A stretch of 64,000 nucleotides of DNA from Stegostoma tigrinum (GCF_030684315.1 NC_081369.1:10206035-10270034); one strand, 5' to 3'; shown: positions 18,151 to 53,239, counted from the stretch's first letter. The notes: generated by a model from the letters alone, not told the origin. Numbers and translations: made by a program.

Positions 18151-18484
18151 TGCTTCTGTATCAAAATCCGTGGTATCCTTTCTTACAAGATAGTGCAATG
18201 GTATTGCTTCGTATATTTAAATACTGTGCTGCTCCACTTCGCATGCTAAAACTTTCAACAGCTCTTGCATTTTACTTCGCGAAGTTCTTTTCCTGATGTA
18301 ATTTTGTTAAGCAGGGGACTGAAAGCTTGTCGGCTTAAGAGAGGAAGGCAGATTTGTGGCTACAATTAGAACAGCGATTACTGAATAGCCGAATAGGTGC
18401 GAGGGTCAGAACGGCCTACTCTTTCTCTGTGTGGTGTACACTGGTTTGCAAATATTATCATCGCTCTTCTTTCTCTTCTGATAG

Positions 18485-18790
18485 CCCCCGAAGCAACTTC
18501 GAGTAAAGTGAAACAGTTCCCCAAATTTGAGAACGTTAACAGAGGTGGGAATGTTTCCATGTTCTGCACATTTCCTATCTTTGAAGAAGCTCCTGATGTT
18601 TATTGGCGGAGACGGGGTGAGGAGTCGGTTCTGGAGCCAGACAGCAGAAAGCAATTCAATGCAAAAAGGGGAACAAGTTCTTTTTCAATCCTAAACGTGA
18701 GTTTCGCTGATGCCGGAGTGTATTTTTGTGAAGTAAAGCACCAGGGAAGGTGGATTGGAGATGGAGGTGGCACGCAGCTGACTGTTTATG
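18485..18790 (+). CDS. Gene A exon: germline-joined VJ-type Ig V domain (NKp30/NCR3- or SIRP-like IgSF receptor)
   Basis: Acceptor ttctttctcttctgatAG and donor GTAAG, phase 1/1. MFC(B strand), VYW(C strand), DAGVYFC(F strand) and J-like GDGGGTQLTV. Confidence 0.92.
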
Positions 18791-19621
18791 GTAAGGATCA
18801 TTGTGCCGGACAGGCTACTTTTCAGCTTTATTAGATACTTTATATCGCGGGACGAAAATTGTCCGAATTGCTTTTACTTGGGTTTGTACTTTCTTTGTCA
18901 TTGTACTTGTGTTAAATAGCAATTGATTCAGTCTCACAATATGAACACATGTCTGAGACCAATTTCACTTGCTTGCTGTCCTGATATTTGCAAGGGTTCT
19001 ACCTCGAAAAGTTTTATTTTTGTCCAGTTACAACTATTATCAAGCCAAGATACCGAAATAAAATAAAAGTTCAAATTTAGGTTTGAAATGAATCAATGCG
19101 CTAAGAGGACAACGTCAATTCAACGGGGCCAATGTGCGACAGTGGGATCAATTCTAACATCTCTTGGGTCTTATCTTTCTCCCTCCTTTATTTACACAAA
19201 TCCAGGGCTAAGGAATGATAGAATTCTGATTCTTGACTACGCACTTAATGCAGTTCTGATGGCCATAATATGTAATGAATCTTGCAAATTGATAATGATT
19301 TTAATTTATACTTGGAAAATTTCTGAAAAGTGTGATCGTAAAGAAAGCATTGAAATTGTTCTCAAGAGTTTCACAAATGATGGAAATTTAACATGGTCCC
19401 ATATATCAGGTTACATGACGCCTATACACAGATTTTCATCTATTAGAGGTAAAAATAGGGCTGATAAAAGCAGAGGGGGAAACGAGCCCAATAGGCAGAA
19501 TGAACTTAGATAAATTCAAAAACTCTGGAACTTCATAATGCCTCAGAGTTAGAATTTTCCATGTTGAATTCTGCATCTGTGCAGTTGTTATGAACTTCAC
19601 ACTGATCAGCAATTCATAAAA

Positions 19622-19960
19622 GCTACAGGGGAGGCGATGGCCTCGTAGTATTATGGCTGGCGTATTCATCCGGAGACCCAGATGAACGTTTGGGGACACA
19701 TGTTCAAATCCTGACACTGCAGACCACTCCAGCAATAAACATCAGGCATTAAGAATCAATTGTTAATTTTTGTGAAAATTCCATCTGTTTCACAATTTTT
19801 TTAGAGCAGCGACTGCCAACCTTTCCTGGTCTGACCTACATGTGACTCCAGCCCCACTGCAAAGTGGTTGACTCTTAACTGTCCTCTGGGCAGTTAGTGA
19901 TGGGCAATAGATACTGCCTGGCCAGCGAAGCCCTCGTCCCGTGAATGAGTAAAGAATAGG
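19622..19960 (+). mobile_element. tRNA-derived SINE in gene A intron, absent from the corresponding gene B intron
   Basis: gggaggcgatggcctcgtagtatta...gttcaaatcc head and LINE-type tail. Same family on the minus strand at about 34155-34590. Confidence 0.6.
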
Positions 19961-20641
19961 ATAGAGCCAGAGAAGCCGTTCCGATTAGTGGAGAGCAAGC
20001 ACAGGATGCGGATTTCAGATAATTTGCAAAATAGTAAGGTACCACGGTCGGAAAATCTTCCAAAGAAGCTGTTCGAGGATCTGGAGCGCACTGCGGAAGA
20101 ATCCGGTGCAATTGTGGTGTTCAAAAGGCAAAGTTAAGAAAGGGATGGAACCAACAACGTCAATTGCAGTGGGGTCTGGCAGCATTTGTGGAGAGAAATG
20201 GAGTTAAGGTTTCCAGTTTGGTTAGACTCTTCTTCACGAGATGTTTTGAGCATTGTGTGAGACAAAATATTTCGTACCACAAACCATCATACATGCAGTA
20301 TGGAGAGAGAGACTTCAGTGACAGACTGGCGTGTACTGCCTCCAATAGTTTGGTCAGGAATGCGACTGTCGCTAACCCCAACCCGGCTCCAGGATGTCAT
20401 TCAGAACACTGCCCCGGCCTCCCTCGTGTAACCAATCCTGGGAGATCCAACATCTTAGTTTATCATTTCACAAATTCCCACTATTTTGTTGTCCGGCTGC
20501 AACACTTCAACATTTCAAATTAAACGATAAAGAGCATGAGTATTGTCACTCTATGAACGTAACAGCGTCGCGGGTGCAGTCAAATGAGGATGTGCTCAAT
20601 TAAATTTAAACAAAACAGAAACTGTTTCTTTTTCCTTCAAG

Positions 20642-20935
20642 TGTCACCGTTGCCACTGAAAGTCGTTCAAGTTGAAGGGGTTTCTGCGGCTTCTGTGAAA
20701 CTGGTGTGTAAAACTGCTGCCTGTTACCCTGAACCTATCGGTATCTCCTGGCGAAGCGATGCTGCCGAAAATCTGACCGGAATACAAACGGTTATAAAGA
20801 CGGCAGATGGACTGTATGAGGTTTCCAGCTCTTTGGAAGAAACGCAGCCTGTGCGGAGCGGAGAGGTTTATACCTGTCTGGTGTCACATGTTTCCCTTCC
20901 TGAACCCGCCAGTGTCAACTTCACCGTCAATCCAG
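20642..20935 (+). CDS. Gene A exon: Ig C1-set domain
   Basis: Acceptor ttccttcaAG and donor GTAAG, phase 1/1. LVCKTAACYPEPIGISW, DGLYEVSSSL and YTCLVSHVSL are C1-set hallmarks. Confidence 0.92.
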
Positions 20936-21319
20936 GTAAGGCAGGAAACACTGGCAGCAGTGAGAGGGACCAGTGCTCCAAGCAGCGTTTAGAGAGGCAG
21001 CATGCAGCTGAGCAGCTTCCAAACCAGAGGGAGGGGTTGAGCGTGGAAAGTATCAACTCGCAAAGCGCCACAAATGGGAAAAGAATCAAGATATTCCTCA
21101 ATTTTTTAATCGAGTAAAATGAAATTACAACTAAAATGTTCTGTGATAATCCCTCCTAGGTCCTATGCCACATATCCTGAATATGTGAAAATATAGATAC
21201 GTTCAGCTGGTTTCTCAGCACTGTGAACTCTAACTCTCTCGCCCTAAACGCCTACGCCTCTCTAACTGTCTCGTTTCACACGCTCCCTAAAATCTGCCTT
21301 AACTTTTTCTGACTCATAA

Positions 21320-23850
21320 TGAAAACTGCAGATGCTATAAATTTGAACTAAAACGAGAATTTTCTGGAGAAACTCAGCAGTACTGCCAGCATCTCTGGAG
21401 AGAACGCACAGTTAATATTTCGAATCCAGTGACCGTTTTTCAGAACTAATGACAGCTAGAAAAAGATAGTGTTTACGCTGAAGGCAGGTTTAGGGTGGGG
21501 GCGGAGACGGAGCCTAAAGGAATTGACAGTTGGCCAGGCAAACGGGTGGATGATAACATGCCAGGGAGAGTGAAAAGCTGAAAATGAGGACCGTAAGTCC
21601 GTGAAATTCTCTTGGCTGTGTTGAAAGCAGCTCATGTGACGGCAGGACGTGGGGTGTGGGGATGGGTAAAGGACATGGAAGGAATACTCAGGCCCTAAAA
21701 TTATTGAATTCATTGTTCAGTCCCGAAAGCTGCAGTTCCTCGTGCGGAAAATGAGTTTCTGTTCCTCCAGCTTGCACTGAGCTTCATTGGAGCAGTTCAG
21801 CAGTCCCGAGGTGGAAATGTTAGCTGCGAGCATGACAGTCTGCTGCAGACGCAAAAGGTTGGCAGATCAGCGGACAGTTTTGGAGACAGACCATAAGTGT
21901 TCTGCAAACCAGTCTGTGTTTCGTCTCCACAGTGTAGGGGTGACCACATTATGAGCAACGAATATGATTGAGTGAAGAGCAGGAAAATCCCTGTTCCACC
22001 TGCAAGGTGCATCTGAGACCTTGGATAATGATGGTGGAGAAAGTAAACAGGAAAGTGTTCCACCTTCTTTGTTTGCATGGCAAGGTGACGTGGGAGTGTA
22101 AGGGACTATTGTGAGTGGAGGATGAGTGGGCTGGGGTGACAATGTCCTGACAAAGGAGGGAGGCTGAATGTTTGTCTGCTGGTTGCATCCACAGATGGTA
22201 CCATAAATGATGAGTTTTGATCTTTCTCTTGGAAATTGAGGACAAATAGAACCCTATCATTATTGAGGGAGTGAAGAAGATGAGTGAGGCAGATGTGGGG
22301 GAGATGCATCAGACATGGTTGAGGGCTGTCTTAAGCATGGGAGCAGGGAATCCTCAGTTGAAAAAACATGGTGGACATTTCTGTGATATGAAAGTAGCAT
22401 CATCACAACAGACATGCTGTACATGGAAAAACTGAGAGAACAGAATGAAGTATTTACAGGAATTGACATGTGAAGATAAATAGCCAGAGTAATTGGGCTT
22501 GTACTGAATACTGGTGCCCAGACTAAGCCGGAATGGAAACACAAATGTTGAGAAAGTGATGCGGGGAATAAGAGATGGACCAGCTTAAAGTGAGAGCAGG
22601 GTGGAAATTGAAAGCAAAATTGATAACTTTTTCCAGGTTTGGATGAGAGAGGGGAGCAGCACCAATGAAGTCATCGATGAACTGGAAAAAGAGTTGTGGG
22701 AGGGACCTGAGTGGGATTGGAACATGGAATGGCCCGAGTATCCATCAAGGACACAGGCAAAACTGAAGATTATGCCAGTGTCAATGGCCAAACATTTGAT
22801 TTGAAGAAGCTCAGAGGAATTAAAGGAGAAGATGTTCAAAGTGAGGACGAGATTGCCAGGTGGAGGGTGTGATGGATGATTATGGTTCAGTCTTTTTCTC
22901 CAAGAAGAAGGGGTTTCCCTAAAACCATCATAATAGTGAAGAATGTGTAAAGGGATTGCACATCCGTTGTGAAGATGAGGTAGTTGCTGCCACAAACTGG
23001 AAATTCCGAACTGATGTAAAGTGTCAAATGAATCAGTGGGAAGGGACCTGAGAAAGGGGTCAAGGTAGGAAAGCATAAAATCTGTGTGGCAGTAACAGGC
23101 AGAAACAATTGTTCTCCCCAGCAAGTTATATTGCTGGATTTGAGTTAGAAGATAGAAGCAGGCTCTATATGTTGGTGGAGCATACGTTTTAAGTCTATGG
23201 CAAGGAGACTACCAGATTCCCAGCCCAGTCACTTCCTCCCTCCTCACCAGCTAATCCTCCAGACACAACTTCCAAGTGAAGCAGTGATTTACCTTCTTGT
23301 TACTCTGTTCACTGGTCAGTGTCGTCTCCTGTACACTGTGGAGACAAAACACGGATTGGGCAATTGCTTTGCAGAAAACCTTCATTCTGTCCTCAAAAAT
23401 GACATTGAACTTCCAACTGCCTGCTATTCAACACACCTCCATGCTCCATGGTCAACATTTCTGCCTCAGGCCTGCTGTAGTGTTCTAGCAAGCCTCAGTA
23501 CAAGCTGGAAGAACAGTTTAATTTTCAAACTGGGGACATTGCAGCCGTCAGAATCAACATCGAGTTCAATAATTTTAGTGTCGGAATACTACGTCCATGT
23601 CCTTTACCCACCCTCGCACCCCAGGTCCTGCCAATGACATGAACCGCTTTCAGCAGAGCCAAGCCATTTTCATCTAGTTATGATCACAATTTTCCGTTTT
23701 TCTGCCTTCCTGACATGTTGTCATCCATCCCTTTGTTTGTCCAGCTGTTGTTTTCTCTTTTTTGGGCTCTATCGCTGCCTATTCGCTCACTTTTTCCCCA
23801 CTCCCACTTCCTACACCATCTGAGTTTCTCCAGCAGTTTCTGTTTCTGAT
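21320..23850. mobile_element. Decayed Penelope-like element, RT remnant on minus plus an inverted terminal part
   Basis: PLE RT remnants (LVLTLNIFSFNSS..LQIKCLAIDT; FTTDVQSLYT) and GIY-YIG-like remnants. PLE termini at both ends in opposite orientation. Confidence 0.75.
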
Positions 23851-24346
23851 CCACAAGTTCTAATGCGCTTTGTGTGGCTGGTTTATGTTTGATGACGGTA
23901 CTCTGGAGTGCAATGGACAGTTTGTCATGGTAAAGGAGTTAAATAAATGCAAGGTGCGTGTTTCAATTGCCAAAAGTTACAGTAGGTGTTAAACCTGATT
24001 ACGTGTTTCAGCTGGCGCTGACCTAACACAACAAGATTAATAACGTGTAAGAGTTTTTCCTCTTAAGAAACAAACCGAAGTGAAGATTTCTGAGTCTCTG
24101 TGGAATTGTTGCCTCCACATATTTTATTGTGGGTTAGGGGCTAGTTTGTCATTTCAGACACATTATAATTCTTGTACACATGCTACCCATTGAAATAATA
24201 GAGATCAATCTCTATTGACATTTATTGAACATTATCGTCCTGGGATACCACTTTGCAGACCACCCTCCTGTATCTGACCCACGATTCTCTCTGTTCAAAT
24301 CTCGCTGTATTCTGCAGTTCTTACTCAAATATTATTGATCCTGTAG

Positions 24347-24451
24347 GTGAAGATCTCAACTATGTGCTGATCGCTCGATGGGCAGGTGGCATGCTGGCAA
24401 TCTTACTATTGATAATCATTTTGACAAGCCTCGAAGTGAAGGCATCAGCTG
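24347..24451 (+). CDS. Gene A exon: transmembrane segment with Arg (activating-type)
   Basis: cctgtAG...G/GTAAG, 105 nt, GEDLNYVLIARWAGGMLAILLLIIILTSLEVKASA. Arg codon at 24376-24378. Confidence 0.88.
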
Positions 24452-24869
24452 GTAAGAACTTTTGCTGCTTTGCTGACTATTTTTATTTTCCAAATACAAT
24501 CGTACTTGTTAGAGACATAAAGAGCAGATGAAAGTGATTAACTATAGAGGAATAGTGAGCACTTTCCGACAGCTTTAAATACTGAAATTGATATCACAAG
24601 TAGTTATGTGATTAGCGATTCAACATGGTTATATAAACCGGATTTATTTCAAACCCACGTTTGACTGTTTACTCGAACCCTCCAGTTCTACAACTGGCAG
24701 TGTAACTGTATTCATTTTAAAGTGATATCAGAGTAGCCAACTGGAATAACTGCACAGAGGCTGGCATCCCGTTACAGAGTCACCCTTTATTCACATGTGC
24801 ACCGCACCCTAACTGTGGCCATCCAGCTCAGAGACAGTCCCTGAAGTGAGGAGATCCTGAATCCCTTGG

Positions 24870-26090
24870 TTTTTTTTAATTTTTATAGGTGTGCAAACAA
24901 CATTTTTTTACCTGCCACCACCAGGAAAAAACACAAATGTGACGAAAGCACCAAGATCAAGCAGAGCCCCAAGGGGCAATGCCTGTGTGAGAGAAAAAAT
25001 AAAGTGATGGTGGGTGTAAATCAAAATGGAGCTTGTGTGGGGAAATAAGGCACTGCACAGTCCGCGGTGCCCACCTCTCCCGAAAGGCATCAAGAGCACG
25101 GGTGCGCACCACGTACTCCTTCACCAGAGTCACCCAGGCACGGACGCAGCCACAGAACAGGGACAGGCGGTTGGACATAACGACTACCTCCACATCCGGC
25201 TGCCTGGATCTATTAATGGCCAGCTTCGCCAGGGCTAGGAGCAAACCCACGAAAATTTCCTATGGCAGGCTTCGTCTCCCTCTGCAACTGATGCCCAAAG
25301 ATCAGGAGCGTGGGGCTGAAGTGCAGCCCAAAAACACAAAAGGAGGTCTTTCAGGTAATTCAAAAAGGTGTGGAAGCGCCCACATGCAACATATACATGA
25401 CCCACGGGCTCCACAGCGCAGAAAAACAGACAGTTGGTCCAGGAGTCCATGAACCAACACAACCTGCGTTTTACACGGGACCGCTGCATGCAACACCTTC
25501 CACCACCGATCCCCGAGGGAAAGAGGAAGGACGCCTGCGTAGAGGGCCTTCCAATGGGGATCCCCGCCGCCCGGTGACAAATGAGCATTGCAAGGCGTTT
25601 CCGGGTGTGGGATGAAGGAGAAGAGGTGGATGGTGTGCATCAGCTGTCTGTGCACGGTTTGCCGTTTCACATCTTCTTAGGATACAAATGTGAAATTCCG
25701 GAAGTGGCTCATGTTGTGGGGCACAGGCTCCCGGGGGAGGTACGGGATTCTTGGGCCAGCATGAAATTCCATCTGAGGAGCGGTACCCACAGATGGGATC
25801 TAAACGCACACTTGAGAGTCCACCAACTGGTGCACAATGGAAGAGTCCGAGCACCGCCGTTTTAAGGCATTGAATGACGGCCGCGAATCGGATGTCCACC
25901 ACAGTTCTGCATGCCAATCCCTGTGGCAGCATCCAGCCCAGATCCCTGCCACCTAGCACATCCCCGACGCTTGTCACTCCCGCAGCCACGGCCCTCCCCT
26001 CCAACAGACAATCGACCTGGCGACCACGAAGGTGCTAATTCCTTAGCAGTGGCACTCCTACCGGTGGTAGGCGCGATGTGACTCAACCAT
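24870..26090 (-). mobile_element. Tx1/L1-clade LINE, 3' part
   Basis: ORF2 C-terminal-like peptides GLLLALAKLAINRSRQ and ALDAFRERWAP, a Cys/His region, and a T-rich (polyA) end near 24870. Confidence 0.7.
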
Positions 26091-29000
26091 GATCCAGACA
26101 GTGATCAAATCATAAGACCAGATGCAGGGGCAGAAACTAGATCTATCAGCCCATTGAGTCTGCTCCGCCATTGAATCATGGCTGATAAGTTTCTCAACCC
26201 CATTCACCCGCTGTCTCCCAGTAATCCTTGATCCCCTTAACAACCAAACCACCTATTTATCTCCATATAATTATGCTCAATGACCTGGCATCCACACCCT
26301 CTGTGGCAGTCATTTCCATGGATTCACCCCCGTCTGACTAAAGAAGTTTCTCCTTATCTCGGTTCTAAAATACTTTAAAGCTGTGCCATCAGGTCCTCAT
26401 CTCTCCTACCAATGGAAACATTTTCCCAACATTCATTCACTGTTCTGTAACATTAACTTAGATCCCCCCTCATCCTTCTAAATTCCATTGAGTATAGACC
26501 CAGAGTCCTCAAACGCTCCCCATATGTTAAGTTGTTCATTCCTGGCACCATTCTCACGAACCTCCTCTGAACATGTTCCAGGGCCAGGACATCTTTCCTG
26601 TGATATAGAACCCAAATCTGCGCATAATACTCCAAATGTGGTATGGCCAGATCCTTTTGGAGCCTCAGAATTACATCCGTGCTTTATATTCAAATCCTCT
26701 CAAAATAAATACCAAAGTTCTATTTGGCTTCCTAACTACTGATTCAACCTACAAATGTATCTGAAGAGAATCCTGGATAAGAACTCCCAAGTGTCTTTGC
26801 ACTTCAGACTTGTGAATTTTCTCCCCATTTAGAAAATATTCTATTCCTCTCCTTACCAAAGTGCATGAGCTCACAATTTTCCACATTGTACTCTATCTGC
26901 CATTTCTTTGCCCATTCTCCTAACCTGCCCAAATCTTTCTTCAGCCTCCCTGCCACCCCAACACTACCTGTCTCTTTACCTATATTTGTGTCATCTGCAA
27001 ACTTAACCAGAATGCCCTCAGTTCCTTCATATAGATCATTAATGTATAAAGTGAAAAGTTGTGGTCCCAACACTGGCCCTTATGGAACACCACTTGTCAC
27101 CAGATGCCATTCTAAGAAAGACCCTTTTAACCCCATTCTCTGCTTTCTGCCAGACAGCCAATCTTCTATTCATGCTAATACCTTGCTTCGAACACCATGG
27201 GCCCTTATCTTACTCAGCAGCCTCCTGTGCAGCACCTTGTCAAAGCACTTCTTGAAGTCCAGATAGTTGACATCTTTTGGCTGTCCTTGGTCTAATCTGC
27301 TCGTTATTTCCACAAAGAATTCTAACAGATTTTTCAGGCATGACCTCCCCTTGACAAAACTGTCCTGACTTTGTCCTATTTTACCAAGCACTTGCAAGTA
27401 TTCAGAAATCTCATCCTTCACAATAGGCTGTATAATCTAACCCACAACAGAGGTTACGTTAATCAGCCTGTAATTTTTAGCCTTTTTCCTGAGTCCCTTT
27501 TTAAACAGGAGTGTCACAGTGATTTTCCAGTCCTCTTGGGATCATCCCTGACCCTAGCGATTCCCAAAAGATCACTCCTAATGATGATGCACTACCTCTT
27601 CAGCTATCTCCTCAAGAACTCTGGGGTGTAGTGCATCTGGTCCTGGTTATTTACTTATCCTCAGGCCATTCAGTTTTTCACACACCTTGTTCTGGGTGAT
27701 GGCCACCATTCTCAGCTCTATTCCATGAATCTCTCAAATTTTTTGGAGATTACTCCTGTCTTCCACTGTGAGCAGAGACTTGGCTGCAAGGGGATCAGAA
27801 TTGGGAGCTGAATATCAAAGGATGTACATCTTATTGAAAACATAGGCAGGCAGGTGGTGGTGTTGCCTTATTAGCAGAAATGAAAGTAAATCAATCTTAA
27901 GAAATGAAGTAGGGTCAGATGGCATAGAATCTATGTGGGTAGAGTTGACGAATCACAGGTGTAAAAAGAAATCACGGTAGGAATTATGTATAGGCCTACA
28001 AACAGTCATCAGTATTTTGCAGTAATTATTCAATTCCTCAGCCATTTCCTTATTCCTCACTACTTTCTCCCCAGCGCCATTTTCCAGCCGCCCAATGTCC
28101 ACTTTTGCCTCTCTTTTGCTCTTTATATATTTAAAGAAACTCTTACAGCCCCCCTTCATATTATTGGTAGCTTACTCTCATGTTTAAATTTCTCCCTCCT
28201 TATTTCTTTTTTTGTTGACTTCTATTGATCTTTGGAGGCTTCCCATTTCTCTGGTCTCCCATTGCCCCTTGCCACATTATTTCCTTTCTCGCTTGCTTTA
28301 TGCTATTCTGACTTCCCTAGTCAACCATGTTTGCCTCTTCATCTGTGAACCATGCTTCTTTTGCTTAGGGGTGATTATTTTGCTGTATCCTCTGAATTAC
28401 TCCTAGAAACTCCTGACATTGCCATTCCACTGTCTTTACTGCTGGGGTCTTCTCCCAGATAATTCTGCCCAGCTCCTCCCTCATGACTCTGTAGTTGCCT
28501 TTATTTGGCTGTAATACCATTATCTCTGATTCTATCTTCTCTCTCTCAAACTTCAGACTAAGTTCAATCATATTGTGATCACTAAGGCTTCCTTCACCTT
28601 AGGCACATTGAAATCCTGCATGATCAGCATAACTTTGATTTTTGTTACATACCTTCTCCATCTCCTTGTGTATTTTGTGCTTCAACTCCTGACTACAGTT
28701 TGGATGCCTGAAGATAATTCCAGCAATGATTTTTATTTGCCTCTGTGGTTCATCAACAGTACCCACACAGATTCTACACCATCCAACCCTACTTCATTTC
28801 TTGCGATTGATTTAATTTCATTTCTGATGAATAAGCCAACTCCATTCTCTCTGCCCACCTGTCTATCTTTTCAAAAAGATGTATATTCTTTGACATTCAG
28901 CTCCCAATCCCGACCCCCTTGCAGCCATATCTCTGTCATGCCCACCACGTAATATCGATCAGCACTGCAAGCTCATTTACCTTATTTCTTACATTGTTTG

Positions 29001-29989
29001 CATTCAGGTATAACACCTTCAGTCCTGTATTAACTGTCCCACTTTTCATTGTTACTCATTTAACCAGTGTGCTTGAAGTTTGATTTCTAACCCCTTACAA
29101 ACATTCTGTCCTATTTGTGTCTATGTTGGAGACTTCAATAACCTCTCCTAAGTTTTCCTTTCCCGTCATTTTTATTTTTCATATTTTTCCACGCAGTGGA
29201 ATCTACCCCTGCAGATGTTAGTCTGCTGCTTTGTTCCCCACTGGGACAAGTTTTATCCTTCCCTTCCCTTCACACCCCACTTTCTAGTTTAATGTCCCAT
29301 TGACCAGTCTATTTACCCTTTTCGCTAGAACATTGGTCTCAGCTTGGCTCAGGTGAAGACCATCCCAGCGGTACAGATCCCTCATGTTCCAAAACTGATG
29401 CCAGTGCCACATGAAAAGGAACCCCTCTTTCCTGCACCACACTTTTACCCACGTGTTTATTTCCCATATTCTCGGGTCCCCATGGCAATTTGCACATGGC
29501 TCTGGCAGTAAGTCAGAGACTATAACCTTGAGGGCCTGTTCTTTAATTTCATGTATAGCTCCTGATTCGCAGTGAACAGGACCTCTTTCCTAATCTTGCC
29601 TATGCTGTTTGTTTGGTGTAGACCACAACAACTGGATCCTCTCCCTTCTTCTCCAATATCCTTTCAAGGTGGTCATAGATATCCCTTACCCTGGCAATGG
29701 GCAAGCAACACACCATACAGGACTGTTGAGCCTGCTTACAAAGTATACTATTTATTCCCCTGACTATAGATTCCCCTACAACTACCACTTGTATTTTTGC
29801 TACCCCCCATGCATGGCATCCTGAGCCACGTTGCAGTGGTCAGATGGGTCATCCTCCCTGCAGCCCTTTGCCTCATCCACAATGGGAACAAATAGCTCAC
29901 ACCTGGTGGACAAGGTCAAGAGCTGAGGCTTCTTTGTTCCTGAATGCAGGATCAGTCTACCTGCTTCACTTGCAGTCATACCCTGCTGT

Positions 29990-30477
29990 GGATGTGAGTT
30001 TGCTCGCTGAGCTGGAAGGTTAGTTTTCAGACGTTTCATCACCATTCTACGTAACATCATCAGTGAGCCTCCGACGAAACGCTGGTGTTATGTCACTATC
30101 ACTCGTATCCTTACATACAGATGAGGAAGGACACCACTTTGATTGGGACAACACATCCATCCTAGGACAAGCCAAACAGAGACACGCACGAGAATTCCTA
30201 GAAGCATGACATTCCAACCGGAACTCCATCAACAAACACATTGATTTGGAGCCCATCTACCATCCTCTGAGAAAAAGAACAGGAAATGACATCACCAACC
30301 CAAGGAAACCTAAACATATAAATAGAAAGCGGGATATAACACCAGCGCTTCGTCGGAGGCTCACTGATGATGTTACCTAGAATGGTGACGAAACGTCTGA
30401 AAACTAACCTTCCAGCTCAGTGAGCAAACTCACATCTAGAACCTCAACCTGAGCTACAAATCTTCTCTAAACTCGCT
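29990..30477 (+). mobile_element. Young 5'-truncated PLE with inverted terminal copy and 12-bp flanking duplication, inserted in CR1 ORF1
   Basis: ataccctgctgt at 29978-29989 and 30478-30489. GIY-YIG C-terminal-like peptide HTDEEGHHFDWDNTSILGQAKQRHAREFLEA. Terminal segments are inverted copies. Confidence 0.85.
30361..30400 (+). ncRNA. Minimal hammerhead ribozyme motif (PLE-type)
   Basis: tca-CTGATGA-t-GTTACC-tagaat-GGTGAC-GAAAC-GTC-tga: intact core, 6-bp stem II, 3-bp stem I, palindromic ACGT helix III. Confidence 0.75.
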
Positions 30478-30839
30478 ATACCCTGCTGTCCTTGACCACT
30501 GACCAAATTTGAAGCTCTTAATCTACCAGGTGTGACTGCCTCCTGAAACATAGCGCCCAGTTACTTCTCCCCCTCCCATATATGTCACAGTATTTGAAGC
30601 TCAGGTTCCAGCTCATCAACACTGAGCTGAAGTTCCTCGAACAGCCAACATTTGTTGCAAATATGGCCACCATTGTTCACAATGGGATCAGCCAGCTCCC
30701 ACATCATACAGCGACAACACGTCACCTGCCAGCCATTTCCAGTTTGTTAATTACTTTATTGAATTCATTAAATTTATTGATACTTCTTGGCTGTGTTCTT
30801 TTCCAAATTTAGTGCAAATTCAGATACTGGTAAAAGACA

Positions 30840-31910
30840 TGCAGCATCCTGAGAGTGACCTCCAAACCAGCACAGTTGATAAATAAGAACTGTGTGTTGT
30901 AGTTGAGGTTACACACCCAGCAGAAAAAATATGTTGCCAGGGCACAACCCCTAGGAGGACGCTCAATACAAAGGTAAGGCTGTAAGGTCTGAAGGCAAAA
31001 AAATCACCATCTAGGTGTGGAAGCTCACCAACAACTGACTGCCCTGCTCAGTAGGCATATTCAGAACATGTGCTGCAACCCCGTGTATCTTTTTGTCCTA
31101 GGAGAAGTGGACCAACGTTCTCTGGATGTCAGCAACAAAACCAGGAAAATGGACCAAAGGGACAAGACAGTACCACAACATAGAGGCCACCAGCTGGTTT
31201 ATGACTACCACTCCGAACAGCCCTGTCCAGCGGCCTAGACAAGATGAGACTTTGACCTCCAGCTCCTGCTAATTCGCCAGTCAGGGTTCCACGGCCCAGC
31301 TAAGGTGGATCCCCAGACAGAAGAAATGGATGGCGCTCCAGCTGAACCCCATAGATCCTCCGGCAGAGAGCCCACCCACCATGGACCAACCAGGAGTCTG
31401 GAACATTTAGCCCAGTTAATCCCCGCAGGAGACCAGCCACTGAAAGCACCACCTGGCACTCGCTCATCCTCCCCAGTTCAAATGGGTCAGTGAGAGTGAG
31501 GAGCACATCAACAGTGTAAACCAAAAGGACCATGTCGGTAACCAGCCGGTGCAGAACCAGTCCCAACAACCACCTCGGCAAGAGGCACAGGAAAGGCTCC
31601 ACGCACAGGGAACACTAGTGGCTGGACAAAGGGCAGAGCCTGACTCACACCTCTCTTGAAGCAAAGGATTTGCTTCATTGCCTGAATCCGACCTTGGTAT
31701 ACCACCGCAGAGTACCTGGTTAAAGATAAAGGGCCCCTGTTTTTGAGACAACGTGGGTCACCCTTCTTTGGCAGCAGCACGATGACTGTCCTGGAAAGGG
31801 ACAGCTGTCCGGCCTTAATGCAGTCTGCCAGGACCCACACGTAGTCACCCTACAGGACATCCCAGAATGCCCTGAAGAACACCACACTCAGCCCGTACAG
31901 CCTGGGGACT
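30840..31910 (-). mobile_element. Tx1/L1-clade LINE, RT part, separated from 24870-26090 by the CR1 insertion
   Basis: PGLYGLSVVFFRAFWDVL and TVIVLLPKKGDPRCLKNRGPLSL resemble RT domain 0/1 motifs. Confidence 0.7.
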
Positions 31911-32799: not shown

Positions 32800-32852
32800 G
32801 CGTTAGAAGATATTCTGCAAAAGTGGATGAAGCTCAATACCTGGTAAAGTGA
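32800..32852 (+). CDS. Gene A short cytoplasmic, probably terminal, exon GVRRYSAKVDEAQYLVK*
   Basis: Acceptor ttcttttctttcctttAG has the same context as the gene B exon at 56570, phase 1. Homologous to B GISAEVNQAEKA. Possible donor GTAAAG after 32843, or read-through to TGA at 32850-32852. Confidence 0.72.
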
Positions 32853-44761: not shown

Positions 44762-44791
44762 GACGTTTCGGATCCGTTGACCCTTCCTCAG
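44762..44791 (-). ncRNA. Minimal hammerhead ribozyme motif (PLE-type)
   Basis: Reverse complement CTGAGGA-a-GGGTC-aacg-GATCC-GAAAC-GTC. Confidence 0.65.
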
Positions 44792-44847
44792 AACGTATGT
44801 CTTCCTTTGTCTTCCTGATCAAGGTCACAAGATCCCTGGCCATCCAA

Positions 44848-45708: not shown

Positions 45709-48700
45709 GCAAGGATCACGTAATTTGCTATAGCTATCCGGCACTCTCGCAGGAATTAGCCGTTCCTGAACTCTTATCAACTGCCGTTTGAAATACTCCC
45801 AAATGTCCGATGTAAATGTACACTTAAACAGCTACCTCCAATCAAAATTCTCCAGTTCCTCCTTACTATTGTTGCAGTTCGTCATCTCCTAATTTAACAC
45901 CTTCACCCGAGGACTCCTCTTATCCCTGCCCATGAGTGTCTCAAGACTCACGGTAACGCTACTCCAAAAATGTTCACTCACTGGAACGTCGGTCACCGAG
46001 CTGGGCCCATTTCCCAAAGCAAGGTGCAGTATAACGCCTTCTTTGGTTGGACTGTTTATATGTTGTGTCAAGAATGTCTCCTGAATGCTCCTTACAAATT
46101 CTGCCCCATCCAAGTCTCTAGCACTTGGAGACTAGGCAATCTCGCGTAAGTTAAAATCACCCACCACAACGATCTTGCTGTTTTTACATCTCTCCAAAAC
46201 CTGTCGACATATTCGCTCATCTATCTCTAGCTGGCTGTTGGGAGGCCTGCGGTATACCCCAAGCATTATGATTTCACTCTTCCTATACCCACCATTGCAT
46301 CGCAGGAGTCCTCTGACATATCCTCCTTCAGAGCAGCTGTGAGATTCTCGTTTATCAGTAACGCAACTTCCCCAACCCTTTTCCTGCCTTTCTGTCACAC
46401 TTGAAATTGATGGTGCTTGGACGAAGGCTGTAATATGCTCTGAGGAGGAATAATAGGTGAATCTCAAATCGAATATTACCGAGCAGATTATTATCATGCA
46501 AGTTTCGTTTCAAAGCACTATGGATCGCAAATTTCAGACCTCTGCTGAAATAGGGAGTAGGCTGATGGAACGTTACTTGCCCAGTTTGATTTCTGCTGCC
46601 TTCTTTTTCTGGACGGGGGGACATTTAAGTGGGCTACGTTACAAATTATTGGGTAGACGCCACCTTTGTGGGTGCGCTGAAGAAGCTTGGCTAGGGCTCT
46701 TCCACGTTCCGGAACGCGCGTCTTTCGTATTAATATAAGGAGGCTGTCTGAGTCCACAGTTTCTGCAGTAGCTGTGGCGATATACACCTCAACAGCCGAG
46801 ATACTCACAGCCTGGTGTTATGAAGCTACAGCACTGCTCTGGCGAAAACTATCGTGAGATTCTTCCGCTTTTTTTTTCATGAGAACTACTACTGAGAATA
46901 AGCGAATGGTATATGTGGTGTACTGTTGACCAGTTGCTGGGGTTGATAGAGGAGTGTGGCTGGAGGCGGTTGGTGCATCTGAGGTAGCAATCGTGCTTCA
47001 TGATCAAACTGTAACTGCACTTCTTCAGAATAGAGTCGCTTCTTCAAAATAGAATCGTCTCAAATTCTTTGCATTGTCGCACACCTCGCAAAAGCCTACA
47101 CCTTTACATTCATATTGTTATCCAAGAATGGCATTAGGCATAGCTATGACCTCCAACACGGTGTCGTTAATTAGATCAGATGTCAGGGCTTCTATACTTA
47201 TGCTTCTGAAACAGCTGCAGTCGTAACTAACCTATCTAAAGATGAAACTGTGATAAAAAAGATAAATAATGGAATTACTCACATTTTACAATTGCTAAAA
47301 GTTAGGAGATATCGATGGAAGTTAAAATCTGGGGTACATGTATGTTTTTTGAGAGCAACAGGACAAATGAAAAGGCTGAGAGGCCCAACGAAGATTCCTG
47401 ACATCACTGGAGAGATTAGAGGTAAATAAAGCAAGGAAGTTACACAACACATTTGTTGAGAACTGTATTGGTCTCAGCTGGGATCTTCTGTACAAATCTG
47501 TCACCACCCTTTAGGGAGATTTCACGAAAATGGAAACAACGCAGAAGATGTTGGCCAGAATGTAAACACAGTCGTGGAATTTAACTATGTGATGAGACTT
47601 GAGAAGCAAAGGATTTTCTCGTTGCAGTTGGGGAGGATGAAATAAATGCGGTGCAGAGTTCACAATAGCTTTAAAAGGCAAATTGAAGAAAACTATTCCC
47701 AGTTACATAAGGGTTGGAAACCAAATTTCAAAGAGTTAAGGCGATTGACAAAAGCACTAGTGGCTACAGGGAAGAAGTGTTGTACCAATCTAGTCCTGTC
47801 CCGTTGTTACCCATACTACGACGAACAAAACTCCTGAATGATTTGCACCTACAGGTTTACATTAAAGTTAATAGAAGACATAACTAATTTGGAAACTACA
47901 AGCAGCTGAACACTGTAAGTAAGCAAAGTCCTATTTTATGTGATGAACATTCGTACTCGAAACGTTAACTTTGTGTCCTTCTCACAAAAGATGCAAGACC
48001 TTGAGCTGCTCCAGCAATTTCTGCTGTTGCTCCCATTTTCATTGTCTTCTTTTAATTGCTTTTACCAGCAAAATGATAGTCTCTTTATCCGCTTCTCCTC
48101 GCACTTCCATCTGGAAATGCCAGGACAGCACCCTGAAAAATGTTTGTTGCTTTTCAGGCCGCTGAATTAATGGCAGTAACTGTGAACTAGATGAACAGGG
48201 GTCTCGAACTTCACATCTGCAGTGAGTGAAAATAATATTATTGTCGAAATTCCTAGGCCGGAGAAAGGGAATTGAGCAACGTTATCAATCCTAACTGCTA
48301 TTCCAATGATTTCTGCTTGAGATCGAAATGGACGTGGAGATCCCAATTCTAAATATTTTACCACTCATTGTCTTGCATATAGGTGAATACTTTAGGTGTG
48401 ATACTGGAAAAACAGCGATGCTTGCGACCTGAATCATCATTTTCAGAACGTACCAAGGCTCGAAAGTTGTTGTTTATAACTGATCGGAAAGCATTGTTCC
48501 GGCAGTGTCAGAAATATATTGTCTTCAGATAGAAATTTCTCAACGAGCAGCGAGCAAGGAACCTCCCACTTCCCAGACTTCAGGGACTCAACTCTCGTCA
48601 TGTGATGTCTCAGGTCATGGATCATAGGCTTGATAAGTTTTTTTCCGCCAAACCATTCAGGACACCATCCTCATTTACAACAAGAAACCAACAAACTTTT

Positions 48701-49119
48701 CTTTTATGTCTGAAATATGTTTGTGATAGTTCCAGTACAGTACATGACTCTACTTGGAATAATTTGGTCAGGTACATTTCGTTGCTGTATGCCCCTTGTC
48801 AAAATCCGTTATATCCTATTTTAGAAGATAATGAAATGCATCTGTAATGTTCTGCATCAGTAAACACTGTGCTGCTCCACTTCGCATGCTAAAACTTTCA
48901 ATAGCTCTTGCATTTTACTTCGCGAAGTTCTTTTCCTGATGTAATTTTGTTAAGCAGGGGACTGAAAGCTTGTCGGCTTAAGAGAGGAAGGCAGATTAGA
49001 ATTAGAACAGCTACTATTGAATAGCCGAGAGGTGCGAGGGACAGAACGGCCTACTCTTTCTCTGTGTGGTGTACACTGGTTTGCAAATATTATCATCGCT
49101 CTTCTTTCTCTTCTGATAG

Positions 49120-49425
49120 CCCCCGAAGCAACTTCGAGTAAAGTGAAACAGTTCCCCAAATTTGAGAGCGTTAACAGAGGTGGGAATGTTTCCATGTTCT
49201 GCACATTTCCTATCTTTGAAGAAGCTCCTGATGTTTATTGGCGGAGACGGGGTGAGGAGTCGGTTCTGGAGCCAGACAGCAGAAAGCAATTCAATGCAAA
49301 ACGGGGAACAAGTTCTTTTTCAATCCTAAAAGTGAGTTTCGCTGATGCCGGAGTGTATTTTTGTGAAGTAAAGCACCAGGGAAGGTGGATTGGAGATGGA
49401 GGTGGCACGCAGCTGACTGTTTATG
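49120..49425 (+). CDS. Gene B exon: germline-joined VJ-type Ig V domain
   Basis: 306 nt, AG/GTAAG, phase 1/1. Three nt differences from the gene A V exon. Confidence 0.92.
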
Positions 49426-49555
49426 GTAAGGATCATTGTACCGGACAGGCTACTTTTCAGCTTTATTAGATACTTACGCTTTTTCTAAATCTCGAACTTT
49501 CTTCGAATTGCTTTTACGCGGGTTTATATTTTCGTTGTCATTGAGCACGTGTTAA

Positions 49556-49772
49556 AACTGCAGATGTTGGAGTCAGAGTAGATACAATGTGGAGCTGGAG
49601 GAAGACAGCAGGTCAGGCAGCTTCAGAGAAGGGCCGACGTTTCGGGCCTAGACCCTTCATTAGAACTTCACGAGTCTTTTTGAAGGATCTCGGCCCGAAA
49701 CGTCGACTCTCCTACTCCTCTGATGCTGCCTGACCTGCTGTGTTCGTCCAACTCCACGCTGTATGGATTCCA
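49556..49772. mobile_element. Older palindromic PLE terminal insertion specific to the gene B V-C1 intron
   Basis: Inverted PLE termini flanked by gttaaa. The corresponding gene A site (about 18910, gtgttaaatagc) is empty. Confidence 0.7.
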
Positions 49773-51078
49773 GTTAAATAACAACTGGTTCACTTTCGCC
49801 ATTTGACCATTTTTGTCTAGAAGCAATTTCACTCGCTTGCTCTCCTGATGGTTGAAAGGGTTCTATCTCCAACAGTTTTATTATAGTCCAGTTGCAATTG
49901 TTTTCAAACCATGATACCGGTAGAATAAAAGTTTAAATTTTGGTTTCAAAAGAACCAGTGAGCGAAGAAAACAAAATCCCTTCTTGCCAAAGTAACGACG
50001 CCAGTATGTGACAATGAATTTATGCAAATCGAGGGTTAAAGAATGACGGAATTCTGAGTCTTAGCTATGCACTTAATGCAGTTCTGTTGGCCATAAGATT
50101 TAAGGAAACTTACAAATTGGTAATGACCTTAATTGATATTTCGAAAATTTCGGGAAGATCTGCATGTAAAGAAAACATTCAAATTGTTTTCAATAATATC
50201 ACAAACAATTCAAAGTTAACAGATCCATATATCAGGTACATAACGCCTATAGATTGTGTGGACACTGTTTCACATCTGTGAGAGGGAAAAATAGGCCGGT
50301 TAAAAGCAGGTTAGAAAAGAGTCCAAGAGACGGAAAGAATTAATAAAAGCTAAGGGTAGTGTGACGCCAGAGAAGCCGTTCAGATTGGTGAAAGGAAAAA
50401 CAGAGGACACACATTTATGATAACGTGCTATACTGTTAGGCACGACAGTCGGAAATATTTAAGTAAAGCTTTTCAAGGATGTGGATTGCACTGCGGGAGC
50501 CTCCGGTGCAACCGTGGCGTTCAAAGGCAAATTTATAATTTCCTAAAAAACAGATTAAAAGCTGTTAAGGATGTGGTGAAAAAGATGAAACCAACAACCA
50601 GAGCGGCAGTAGATCTGGCTGCATTTGTGGGGAGAAATGGAATTAACGTTTCCAGTTTGGTGTGACTCTTCTTCACGAGATGTTTTGAGCAGTGTACGAA
50701 GCAAAATATTTAGTGCCGCAAAGCTTTATTACTGCAGTCAGGAGAGAGAGGATTCAGTGACAGACTGGCGTGTACTGCCTCCGATAGATTTGCTCAGGAA
50801 TCCGACTGTTGCTAGCACCAATCCCGCTCCACGACCTCATTCAGAACAATGTCCCTGCCTCCCTACATGTAACCAGTCCTGGGAGATCCAACCTTTTTGT
50901 TTATCTTTTCAAATATTCGTACAATTTTGCTACAATTTAAAATTTTAATTTTAAAATTAAACGATAAAGAGCATGAGTATTGTCACTGTATGAACGTAAC
51001 AGCGTCGCGGGTGCAGTCAAATGAGGATGTGCTCAATTAAATTTAAACAAAACAGAAACTGTTTCTTTTTCCTTCAAG

Positions 51079-51372
51079 TGTCACCGTTGCCACTGAAAGT
51101 CGTTCAAGTTGAAGGGGTTTCTGCGGCTTCTGTGAAACTGGTGTGTAAAACTGCTGCCTGTTACCCTGAGCCTATTGGTATCTCCTGGCGAAGAGATGCT
51201 GCCGAAAATCTGACCGGAATACAAACGGTTATAAAGACGGCAGATGGACTGTATGAGGTTTCCAGCTCTTTGGAAGAAACGCAGCCTGTGCGGAGCGGAG
51301 AGGTTTATACCTGTCTGGTGTCACATGTTTCCCTTCCTGAACCCGCCAGTGTCAACTTCACTGTCAATCCAG
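51079..51372 (+). CDS. Gene B exon: Ig C1-set domain
   Basis: 294 nt, AG/GTAAG. Four nt differences from gene A C1, giving one amino acid change (S/R). Confidence 0.92.
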
Positions 51373-51559
51373 GTAAGGCAGGAAACATTTGCAGTAGTGA
51401 GAGGGATCAGTGCTCCAACTTGGATTTATAGAGCAGATATATGGCTGAACAGCTGTCCAAATCAAAGAGAGGGGGTGTATGTGGACTTCATTAATTCCAG
51501 AGCAGTATAATGGAAAAGAAATTACAATGTTCAAAATGATTTTCAGTGTAGGATAGAAA

Positions 51560-53190: not shown

Positions 53191-53239
53191 AAAACTTAAT
53201 AAAAGCTGAATAAGTGATAATAGGATCTATGAGTAGGAG

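What the first reader, a model, noticed from the sequence alone, without database searches (positions are those of the whole stretch)
18223..51386. Exon-centred gene-conversion tracts keep A and B ectodomains nearly identical
Near-identity is confined to two tracts: about 18223-18840 vs 48867-49475 (V) and about 20517-20949 vs 50954-51386 (C1). By eye the V exons differ at 3/306 nt and the C1 exons at 4/294 nt, and synonymous sites and adjacent intron bases are homogenised too. Immediately outside, the introns are alignable but full of substitutions, indels and copy-specific insertions (SINE 19622-19960 in A; PLE 49556-49772 and CR1 51560-53190 in B). The TM exons share only 16/35 aa. Purifying selection alone would not homogenise silent and intronic sites. 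Inference: an old duplication with recent conversion that keeps the activating receptor matched to the ligand specificity of the inhibitory one, as known for Siglec-5/14.
Basis: partly seen in the sequence, partly recalled or inferred. Interest (0 to 1): 0.82.

Follow-up and report, generated by a model that had tools for sequence, protein, structure and literature searches.

The report
Shark paired receptors homogenised by conversion
Two neighbouring shark immune-receptor genes, one with an inhibitory tail and one of activating type, have had the exons for their outer domains recently copied between them, as is known for mammalian Siglec and CEACAM receptor pairs; here it is seen in a shark antibody-like V-C1 gene family.

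Summary
Genes A (18078-32843) and B (48717-58185) are tandem V-set + C1-set receptor genes. Their introns are 78-81% identical. Two tracts stand out: 18223-18839 / 48867-49475 at 98.2% and 20517-20950 / 50954-51387 at 98.8%. Each holds a whole exon plus 49-262 nt of intron (binomial P 1e-35 to 1e-44). The exon counts are right: V 3/306, C1 4/294, TM 16/35 aa. Independent per-run contigs break exactly at the tract edges, show about twofold depth inside, and carry both A and B letters. This is not an assembly artefact.

B ends in an ITIM + ITSM exon. A has an arginine in its membrane span and no ITIM was found.

The best explanation is interlocus gene conversion. A is a chimera: its ectodomain half is B-like, and its TM half is closest to a dead inverted third copy, C. 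Promoter and leader are 98.4% identical between A and C, a third tract.

The mechanism is well known (Siglec-5/14, Siglec-11/16, CEACAM1/3), so this is a new member of a known kind. The scan noted a similar nectin-like pair elsewhere in this genome. Selection for ligand matching is inferred, not shown. No DNA of other sharks could be fetched.

The parts
18078..18132 (+). Gene A leader exon (MFITVPVQYVTLLGIIWP, phase-1 donor)
   Evidence: ATG, hydrophobic peptide and a GT donor, conserved in B. Matches family leaders by tblastn. Lies outside the A-B tract (85.5% to B) but inside the A-C inverted repeat.
18223..18839 (+). V conversion tract in A (partner 48867-49475 in B). 98.2% identical, with an unconverted island at 18354-18406.
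   Evidence: The Logan contig spans exactly 18223-18840 at about twofold depth in run X1; runs X3 and X4 also break at 18840, while the X2 contig starts at 18223 and runs on to 19849.
18485..18790 (+). Gene A V exon (306 nt, phase 1-1). V-set domain with a germline-joined J-like GGGTQLTVY motif.
   Evidence: Pfam V-set E 1.9e-10. Splice sites read. 3/306 differences from B.
20517..20950 (+). C1 conversion tract in A (partner 50954-51387 in B). 98.8% identical.
   Evidence: The Logan contig spans 20517-20924 at about twofold depth in runs X1-X3; X4 breaks only at 20924.
20642..20935 (+). Gene A C1 exon (294 nt, phase 1-1)
   Evidence: Pfam C1-set E 1.8e-9. 4/294 differences from B.
24347..24451 (+). 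Gene A TM exon (105 nt) with an arginine in the span (YVLIARWAGG)
   Evidence: 74/105 nt identical to B and 85/105 to dead copy C.
32800..32843 (+). Gene A first cytoplasmic exon (GVRRYSAKVDEAQYL, phase 1 to 0). No ITIM. A stop follows two codons after the donor if the donor is read through.
   Evidence: Homology to the matching exon of copy C (75% over 151 nt), a polypyrimidine-AG acceptor and a GTAAAG donor.
48717..48771 (+). Gene B leader exon
48867..49475 (+). V conversion tract in B
49120..49425 (+). Gene B V exon. K at 49331 removes an N-x-S sequon that relatives keep.
50954..51387 (+). C1 conversion tract in B
51079..51372 (+). Gene B C1 exon
55365..55469 (+). Gene B TM exon, uncharged span (PLVFGWTGGVLTILLLIFVLT)
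56570..56604 (+). Candidate gene B first cytoplasmic exon (GISAEVNQAEKA, phase 1 to 0)
   Evidence: Splice-pattern scan and resemblance to the family's SAE..QAE segment. Weak evidence.
58066..58185 (+). Gene B last exon with ITIM (VSYAKL) and ITSM (TVYADV)
   Evidence: Homologous to the terminal exon of the family's inhibitory members, E 1e-6.
17253..18150 (+). A arm of an inverted repeat (promoter plus leader), 98.4% identical to 16722-15831
   Evidence: The C-arm letters at 17733, 17754, 17841 and 17842 appear in Logan contigs.
15831..16722 (-). C arm of the inverted repeat, with the leader exon of dead copy C (15903-15849)
11922..12227 (-). Copy C C1 pseudo-exon (two in-frame stops)
   Evidence: Groups with Chiloscyllium P0197 and not with A/B.
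1698..1802 (-). Copy C TM exon, with the same R-W as A. Its acceptor AG is mutated to CG.

Best explanation
A and B are linked paralogs of a cartilaginous-fish family of germline-joined V(J)-C1 membrane receptors, which annotation pipelines label 'SIRP-alpha-like'.

**The two genes**
- B is the inhibitory member. It has an uncharged TM and a terminal ITIM + ITSM exon.
- A is of activating type. It has an arginine in the TM, a short tail, and no ITIM was detected.

**The tracts**
- Two short tracts, 617 and 434 nt, each cover one whole ectodomain exon plus some flanking intron.
- They were recently copied non-reciprocally between the two loci (interlocus gene conversion, or an equivalent double crossover).
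- That reset divergence from about 0.21-0.26 to about 0.01-0.02 substitutions per site.

**Inferred history (not shown)**
1. An old split separated the inhibitory lineage from an R-TM lineage.
2. The R-TM gene duplicated in inverted orientation, giving A and C.
3. The 5' half of A, from promoter to just past C1, was replaced from the B lineage. That half is now about 80% identical to B.
4. More recently came the two exon-centred A-B tracts and an A-C exchange of promoter and leader across the inverted repeat.

The net flow of ectodomain sequence is therefore from the inhibitory lineage into the activating-type gene.

**Consequence (inferred).** A presents essentially the same V-C1 surface as B while signalling oppositely. 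This is the decoy or counterbalance arrangement described for Siglec-5/14, Siglec-11/16 and CEACAM1/3.
For: **Shown**
- Sharp-edged tracts of 98-99% identity in a collinear 78-81% background, covering silent and intronic sites.
- Contigs from separate runs break at the tract edges. Depth is about twofold inside, and both sets of diagnostic letters are present.
- Gene anatomy is intact in both genes, with phase-1 Ig exons.
- B's last exon is homologous to the family's ITIM exon. A has an R in its TM, and no ITIM exon was found downstream.

**Chimerism of A**
- 3' half: A-C 72% against A-B 58% over 1612 shared columns. Site patterns: AC|B 433, AB|C 215, BC|A 130. TM exon: 85/105 identical to C against 74/105 to B.
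- C1 exon: A-C 66.7%, about the same as B-C 66.0%.
- C1 tree: (C, Chiloscyllium P0197) 99/98 and (Chiloscyllium P0185, (A, B)) 100/94. An AU test rejects an A+C clade, p = 0.012.
- A-C inverted repeat: 98.4% over 898 nt.

**The same domain-wise mosaic in catshark proteins**
- Leader + V is 92% identical between genes with different TM types, and 52% between genes with the same TM type.

**Precedents:** PMC4042635, PMC5701461, PMC2832619.
Against: - No transcript evidence for A or B. No RNA run was listed.
- Adaptor pairing of the TM arginine is untested. The arginine lies in the outer third of the span and could simply snorkel.
- The direction of the two recent tracts themselves cannot be read, because the copies are too alike.
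- The B-to-A direction rests on the older stratum and on a pseudogene outgroup. It assumes similar rates in the C1 and TM exons.
- Selection for ligand matching is not needed to explain exon-centred tracts. Conversion needs high identity to start, and exons keep more of it.
- All reads come from one study. It may be the sample from which the window's genome was assembled.
- The cross-species support is at protein level only.
Confidence: 0.82

Rival explanations
1. The conversion is real but neutral. Tracts sit on exons because recombination between diverged paralogs can only start where identity is still high, and that is in the exons. Homogenisation is then self-reinforcing and says nothing about ligand matching. 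A may even be on its way to pseudogenisation, as copy C was.
For: - Introns are only about 80% identical, too low for efficient heteroduplex formation.
- Copy C shows that members of this cluster die.
- A third tract, A-C promoter and leader, involves a dead gene, so it cannot be maintained for ligand matching.
- There is no expression data.
Against: - All five recognised A exons keep open frames and canonical splice sites.
- Both Ig exons are covered in full. A rough post-hoc chance estimate for two random tracts of these lengths is about 0.01.
- The same ectodomain-against-TM mosaic is seen in catshark proteins.
Confidence: 0.3
2. Purifying selection on the exons, together with conserved intronic regulatory or splicing elements, keeps the two copies alike without any exchange.
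For: The tracts are centred on coding exons, and Ig-domain exons are constrained.
Against: - Silent sites are homogenised: 4 silent differences in 600 coding nt, against about 20% in introns.
- 254, 49 and 125 nt of intron are 97-99% identical, with step-like edges.
- The leader and TM exons, which are also coding, are only 85% and 70% identical.
- The C1 tree places A with B, while the TM half places A with C.
Confidence: 0.02
3. Assembly or polishing artefact: the two exons were collapsed or consensus-corrected between paralogs, and the real copies differ more.
For: Near-identical paralogous segments are a classic site of polishing errors. All read data come from one study.
Against: - Per-run de Bruijn contigs, built independently of the assembly, branch exactly at 18223, 18840, 20517 and 20924.
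- Their depth is about twofold inside the tracts in three of four runs.
- In different runs they carry either the A or the B letter at 18259, 18363-18406, 18533, 18805, 20551, 20733, 20739 and 20757. No third, more divergent version appears.
Confidence: 0.03
4. A single hybrid-gene event is the main story. An unequal crossover joined a B-like 5' half to a C-like 3' half, and the two 98-99% tracts are its most slowly evolving remnants, not later conversions.
For: A is indeed a 5'-B-like and 3'-C-like chimera, with the switch just after the C1 exon.
Against: - One event gives one divergence level. Instead, introns inside the same 5' half differ about 15-fold in divergence (0.008-0.028 against 0.21-0.26), with sharp steps.
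- An unconverted island at background divergence lies inside the V tract.
Confidence: 0.05

Closest known systems
CEACAM1 / CEACAM3-type paired receptors of mammals (and Xenopus CEACAMs)
   Same: An ITIM/ITSM receptor and an activating or decoy paralog are kept alike in the ligand-binding Ig exon by gene conversion or recombination. The highest similarity lies in the N-domain exon and 'barely extends into the flanking intron'. In the dog pair it also covers the leader and upstream sequence (PMC2832619; PMC5112662).
   Different: - A different IgSF family: here V(J)-set plus C1-set with a J-like motif.
- Two separate exon tracts, not one.
- The activating partner uses a TM arginine, not an ITAM-like tail.
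- The host is a shark.
Siglec-5/Siglec-14 and Siglec-11/Siglec-16
   Same: Adjacent inhibitory and activating genes. Partial conversions are restricted to the segment encoding the first two domains. The activating member has a charged TM residue that pairs with DAP12 (PMC4042635; PMC5701461).
   Different: - Siglec tracts are contiguous, kilobase-scale 5' segments that include introns. Here the recent tracts are 0.4-0.6 kb islands separated by a 1.7-kb intron at 78% identity.
- The ligand, sialic acid for the Siglecs, is unknown here.
- There is no evidence yet for adaptor pairing.
SIRP-alpha / SIRP-beta (the name given to relatives by annotation pipelines)
   Same: A non-rearranging V domain followed by C1-set domain(s), an inhibitory tyrosine-motif tail, and an activating partner with a basic TM residue. 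SIRP-alpha (2wng) is the second-best PDB hit to a family member.
   Different: - One C1 domain, not two.
- The similarity to SIRP-alpha (E 1.4e-10) is no better than to Ig light chains.
- Orthology was not tested. CD47 binding is unknown.
UrIg / UrIg2 of cartilaginous fish
   Same: Non-rearranging VJ plus C1-type domains in sharks. Within-species homogenisation of UrIg2 C-domain exons by gene conversion is reported (PMC12227049). The UrIg2 structure 9dmx is among the top PDB hits for the C1 exon.
   Different: - No ITIM or inhibitory tail is mentioned in the UrIg paper ('ITIM' and 'inhibitory' occur 0 times), UrIg protein is reported in the extracellular matrix, and UrIg2 has up to nine C domains.
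- Conversion there is between tandem exons of one gene, not between two receptor genes.

Membership tests
Paired inhibitory/activating receptors homogenised by interlocus gene conversion | Two linked paralogs with near-identical ligand-binding ectodomain exons | tested here: met
   V exon 303/306 and C1 exon 290/294 identical. The genes lie 30.6 kb apart on the same strand.
Paired inhibitory/activating receptors homogenised by interlocus gene conversion | Identity confined to tracts with sharp edges that include silent and intronic sites, in an older diverged background | tested here: met
   98.2% and 98.8% against a 78-81% background. Intron parts of the tracts are 97-99% identical. P is 1e-11 to 1e-44. 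Contig break points fall at the edges.
Paired inhibitory/activating receptors homogenised by interlocus gene conversion | One member carries ITIM/ITSM motifs in its tail | tested here: met
   B exon 58066-58185 has VSYAKL and TVYADV. It is homologous to the family's terminal ITIM exon, E 1e-6. Phosphatase recruitment cannot be tested here.
Paired inhibitory/activating receptors homogenised by interlocus gene conversion | The other member has a charged TM residue, a short tail without ITIM, and pairs with an ITAM adaptor | tested here: inconclusive
   There is an arginine in the A TM. The first cytoplasmic exon, 32800-32843, has no ITIM, and no homolog of B's ITIM exon lies downstream. The end of the A transcript is unknown, and adaptor binding cannot be tested.
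Paired inhibitory/activating receptors homogenised by interlocus gene conversion | Ectodomain and TM/tail give conflicting phylogenies | tested here: met
   Inside the window, A groups with B for C1 (100/98) and with C for the TM half. An AU test rejects an A+C clade for C1, p = 0.012.
Paired inhibitory/activating receptors homogenised by interlocus gene conversion | Across species, ectodomain exons cluster by species while TM exons and introns cluster by paralog | tested here: inconclusive
   Proteins only. The two C1 lineages (Chiloscyllium P0185 and P0197) predate the split from the bamboo shark, and A and B are sisters inside the P0185 lineage. Catshark shows the same mosaic.
Paired inhibitory/activating receptors homogenised by interlocus gene conversion | Same ligand, and co-expression in the same cells | not testable with these tools
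   No RNA run was listed for this stretch. The ligand is unknown.
SIRP family | Ectodomain of one V-set and two C1-set domains | tested here: not met
   Only one C1 exon lies between the V and TM exons in A, in B and in the relatives.
SIRP family | Specific sequence kinship to SIRP above other V-C1 proteins | tested here: inconclusive
   SIRP-alpha 2wng scores E 1.4e-10 to relative P0152, which is similar to Ig light chains. It is not among the top 60 hits for the window's own V or C1 exon.
Rearranging antigen receptors (Ig/TCR) | V and J are separate germline segments flanked by recombination signals | tested here: not met
   The V and the J-like GGGTQLTVY motif are contiguous in one 306-nt exon, followed directly by a splice donor.

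The most novel reading that the evidence does not exclude
In this shark family of antigen-receptor-like V(J)-C1 genes, ectodomain exons are repeatedly and directionally copied from inhibitory genes into genes of activating type. They move as exon-sized cassettes: leader/promoter, V and C1 each behave as separate units. The pathogen-driven 'inhibitory receptor plus matched activating decoy' arrangement, and the exon-scale conversion that maintains it, would then already have operated in the earliest jawed vertebrates, on a scaffold close to the precursors of Ig and TCR.
Probability: 0.35. Interest if true: 0.7.

Novelty: new member of a known kind. Interest (0 to 1): 0.55.

Why it matters
**What it extends.** Paired receptors kept alike by gene conversion are a textbook signature of host-pathogen conflict in mammals (Siglec, CEACAM, KIR/LILR). 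In the paper library searched here, the only non-mammalian case that turned up was Xenopus CEACAM.
- A clean case in a shark extends the phenomenon to cartilaginous fish.
- It is read-supported and has base-pair boundaries. It sits in a germline-joined V(J)-C1 family on which I found no paper.
- It marks this 'SIRP-alpha-like' family as a likely target of pathogen exploitation.

**Testable material.**
- Two ectodomains differ at only three residues. One difference removes a conserved N-glycan site in B.
- A has a TM arginine that can be tested for adaptor pairing.

**For annotators.**
- A is a three-way mosaic, so single-gene trees of this family will mislead.
- Short-read assemblies will break at these exons.

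Tried and rejected
**Cross-species DNA**
Protein trees were used instead.

**Expression**
- No RNA run was listed. Reads were laid on DNA contigs.
- The bisulfite runs X5-X7 were not used. Only about 1% of each would be read, and C-to-T changes confound the diagnostic sites.

**Names of the insertions**
- Not confirmed: 0 Rfam matches in the window, 0 tRNAs in 19400-20300, and no Pfam match in the two longest ORFs of the B insert.
- One search failed because the requested frame held stop codons.

**Direction of the two recent tracts**
- Copy C and the Chiloscyllium proteins were tried as outgroups at the seven differing sites. They only show which gene mutated afterwards: A has R to S in C1, and B has N to K in V. 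They do not show who donated.

**GC bias**
- GC content of the tracts against the flanks is uninformative.

**Literature**
- 'PRARP' receptors, named in another agent's note, were not found in the paper library, so that link is untested.
- No paper on SIRP-like paired receptors in sharks was found. One search failed because a search term was too short.

Exons were searched separately by reference, or as separate rows of alignment A2.

Full report
**1. The observation**

A self-comparison of the window finds a collinear direct repeat about 30.6 kb apart. I aligned A 17200-25200 with B 47843-56300.

- Alignable intron and flank are 75-87% identical in 100-nt windows.
- Two blocks reach 97-100%: 18223-18839 against 48867-49475, and 20517-20950 against 50954-51387.
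- The edges are abrupt. On the 5' side of the V tract identity goes from 79% to 99% within about 50 nt. After 20981 it falls to 67%.

- The V exon, 18485-18790, differs at 3 of 306 nt.
- The C1 exon, 20642-20935, differs at 4 of 294 nt.
- The TM exons share 16 of 35 residues and 74 of 105 nt.
- Four of the seven coding differences are silent.

The intron parts of the tracts are homogenised as well: 7/254, 1/49 and 1/125 mismatches. Six of the seven in the first stretch fall in one 53-nt island, 18354-18406. That island also has a 7-bp indel and sits at roughly background divergence. It looks like a patch that escaped conversion, or a gap between two events.

Against a background mismatch rate of 20.5%, the tracts have binomial P of 1e-44 and 1e-35. 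Their intron parts alone give 6e-17 and 1e-11. The longest identical run is 181 nt, against a maximum of 95 in 10,000 permutations.

**2. Not an artefact**

I laid Logan's per-run contigs from four runs (two samples, one study) on 17700-21500.

- Contigs end at 18223, 18840, 20517 and 20924. That is expected of a de Bruijn graph in which two loci with different flanks share these stretches.
- Depth inside the tracts is about twice that of the flanks in three of the four runs. In X1 it is 18.9 against 9.3-10.3, and 16.5 against 8.4-11.4. In X2 the C1 tract is 35.2 against 18.2-20.8.
- Every 'other letter' inside the tracts is the B letter: 18259, the island, 18533, 18805, 20551, 20733, 20739 and 20757. 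Different runs picked different branches.

So two copies with just these few differences exist in the reads. The limit is that all runs belong to one study. It may be the sample from which the window's genome was assembled.

**3. What the genes are**

Both exons have phase-1 borders. They match Pfam V-set (E 2e-10) and C1-set (E 2e-9). The V exon ends in a germline-joined J-like motif, GGGTQLTVY.

Gene models:

| Exon | A | B |
|---|---|---|
| Leader | 18078-18132 | 48717-48771 |
| V | 18485-18790 | 49120-49425 |
| C1 | 20642-20935 | 51079-51372 |
| TM | 24347-24451 | 55365-55469 |
| First cytoplasmic | 32800-32843 | 56570-56604 (candidate) |
| Last | not found | 58066-58185 |

These rest.

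- B's last exon carries an ITIM (VSYAKL) and an ITSM (TVYADV). It is homologous to the terminal exon of inhibitory relatives (E 1e-6).
- A has an arginine in its membrane span (YVLIARWAGG). Its 44-nt cytoplasmic exon has no ITIM. No DNA or protein homolog of B's ITIM exon lies downstream.

Calling A 'activating' is an inference from these features.

Relatives were found with an exhaustive HMMER search and two word-indexed searches.

- They are V-C1-TM proteins of sharks, rays and chimaera.
- NCBI labels them 'tyrosine-protein phosphatase non-receptor type substrate 1-like' (SIRP-alpha-like), among several other mismatched names.
- SIRP-alpha is no closer to them than Ig light chains are, and they have one C1 domain, not two. 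I treat 'SIRP-like' as a description, not as membership.

Other notes of this scan call the genome zebra shark. I did not test that.

**4. A is a mosaic of three relationships**

A third copy, C, lies inverted upstream. It is dead.

- Its leader is at 15903-15849.
- No V exon is detectable.
- Its C1 pseudo-exon, 12227-11922, has two stops.
- Its TM exon, 1802-1698, has the same R-W as A but has lost its acceptor AG.

How A relates to B and C depends on the segment.

- **3' half (A 21900-24800).** A is closer to C (72%) than to B (58%) over 1612 shared columns. Site patterns are AC|B 433, AB|C 215 and BC|A 130. The TM exon is 81% identical to C and 70% to B.
- **C1 exon.** A is no closer to C (66.7%) than B is (66.0%). 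A protein tree gives (C, Chiloscyllium P0197) 99/98 and (Chiloscyllium P0185, (A, B)) 100/94. An AU test rejects an A+C clade, p = 0.012.
- **Background levels.** Where alignable, A-B identity is about 80% in the 5' half and only 68-74% in the 3' half.
- **Promoter and leader.** A 17253-18150 is 98.4% identical to C 16722-15831, as an inverted repeat with a 530-bp spacer. The C-arm letters appear in the contigs.

My reading, which is inferred:

1. Two lineages, inhibitory and R-TM, predate the split from the bamboo shark.
2. A and C are duplicates of the R-TM gene.
3. A's 5' half was replaced from the B lineage.
4. The two exon tracts (A-B) and the promoter/leader tract (A-C) are later exchanges. 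They are similar in age, at 1-2% divergence, which is 5-8% of the background.

Net flow of ectodomain sequence is from the inhibitory lineage into the R-TM gene. The direction of the two recent tracts themselves cannot be read.

**5. Recurrence in the family**

In Scyliorhinus canicula, P0166 and P0033 share a TM type (86% identical) but only 52% of leader + V. P0166 and P0165 have unrelated TM segments (25%) but 92% identical leader + V. All three share 91-94% of C1. That is the same domain-wise mosaic, at protein level only.

P0165 also has an arginine one position away from A's, in the same TM exon type, and it has a truncated tail. A Scyliorhinus torazame relative, P0209, keeps the uncharged TM and a long ITIM tail. 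Derivatives with an R in the TM and a short tail therefore seem to arise repeatedly.

**6. Mechanism and function**

- The mechanism is interlocus gene conversion, or double crossover, in a collinear paralogous context. I hold this with high confidence.
- The tracts are exon-centred. My rough post-hoc estimate that two random tracts of these lengths each cover a whole Ig exon is about 0.01.
- That fits selection for a matched ectodomain. It fits equally well a mechanistic bias, in which exchange starts where identity is highest. The A-C tract involves a dead gene, which shows that conversion in this cluster does not need selection.
- Since the last exchange each gene has gained its own changes. 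Judged against relatives, A has R to S in C1, and B has N to K, which removes a conserved N-x-S sequon in V.

**7. Comparison with what is known**

- In CEACAM1/CEACAM3-type pairs the highest similarity lies in the N-domain exon and barely extends into the introns (PMC2832619).
- Siglec-5/14 and Siglec-11/16 convert only the segment for the first two domains (PMC4042635; PMC5701461).
- UrIg2 shows exon homogenisation by conversion in sharks, but within one gene (PMC12227049).
- I found no paper on this family or on paired receptors of this kind in sharks.
- Another follow-up of this scan reports a nectin-like pair with the same behaviour elsewhere in this genome.

**8. Limits**

- There is no RNA.
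- The TE names are unverified.
- The end of transcript A is unknown.

**9. Verdict**

The history is richer than proposed. Functional matching is plausible but unproven. This is a new member of a known kind.

Noticed in passing
window 15831-16722 (-) and 17253-18150 (+): An inverted repeat, 98.4% identical over 898 nt with a 530-bp spacer. It carries the promoter region and leader exon of gene A and of dead copy C. It ends 18 nt after the leader donor, only 73 nt before the A-B V tract starts. B is 81% identical to both arms.
   Followed up: yes
window 550-16722 (-): Dead third copy C. It has a leader, no V exon, a C1 pseudo-exon with two stops (12227-11922), a TM exon with a lost acceptor (1802-1698) and a cytoplasmic exon remnant near 594-556. 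Its C1 is orthologous in type to Chiloscyllium chiPu_0004843 (P0197), which is intact.
   Followed up: partly
window 14495-14794 and 14844-15143: A tandem duplication of about 300 nt at 99% identity, inside the region where copy C should have its V exon.
   Followed up: no
window 2936-3166 and 4345-4576: A direct repeat of about 230 nt (93-98% identical) within the C1-TM intron of copy C. One unit also matches A 22570-22681 at 83%.
   Followed up: no
window 6983, 10139, 34257, 34726, 35708, 38448, 45278, 56330 and B insert 49556-49772: A short interspersed element of about 106-200 nt with hits on both strands (palindromic, MITE-like). It has at least 8 copies in the window. One copy is the B-specific insert just 3' of the V tract.
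   Followed up: partly
window 19732-19985 and 20113-20239: Contig depth is 10,000-60,000 in the first stretch and 900-4,200 in the second, in all four runs. These are very high-copy repeats inside the A V-C1 intron. Neither has a tRNA or Rfam match.
   Followed up: partly
window 19259: All four runs (both samples) read T where the window has A. This is either an assembly error or the other allele.
   Followed up: no
Proteins P0165, P0166, P0033 (Scyliorhinus canicula) and P0209 (S. torazame): Catshark relatives show V, C1 and TM segments with conflicting similarities. An arginine sits one residue away from A's in the same TM exon type. This suggests parallel evolution of derivatives with an R in the TM and a short tail.
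   Followed up: partly
window 49331 (B) / 18696 (A); 20757 (A) / 51194 (B): Changes since the last conversion. B has lost an N-x-S glycosylation sequon (N to K) that relatives keep. A has changed a conserved arginine of the C1 domain to serine.
   Followed up: partly
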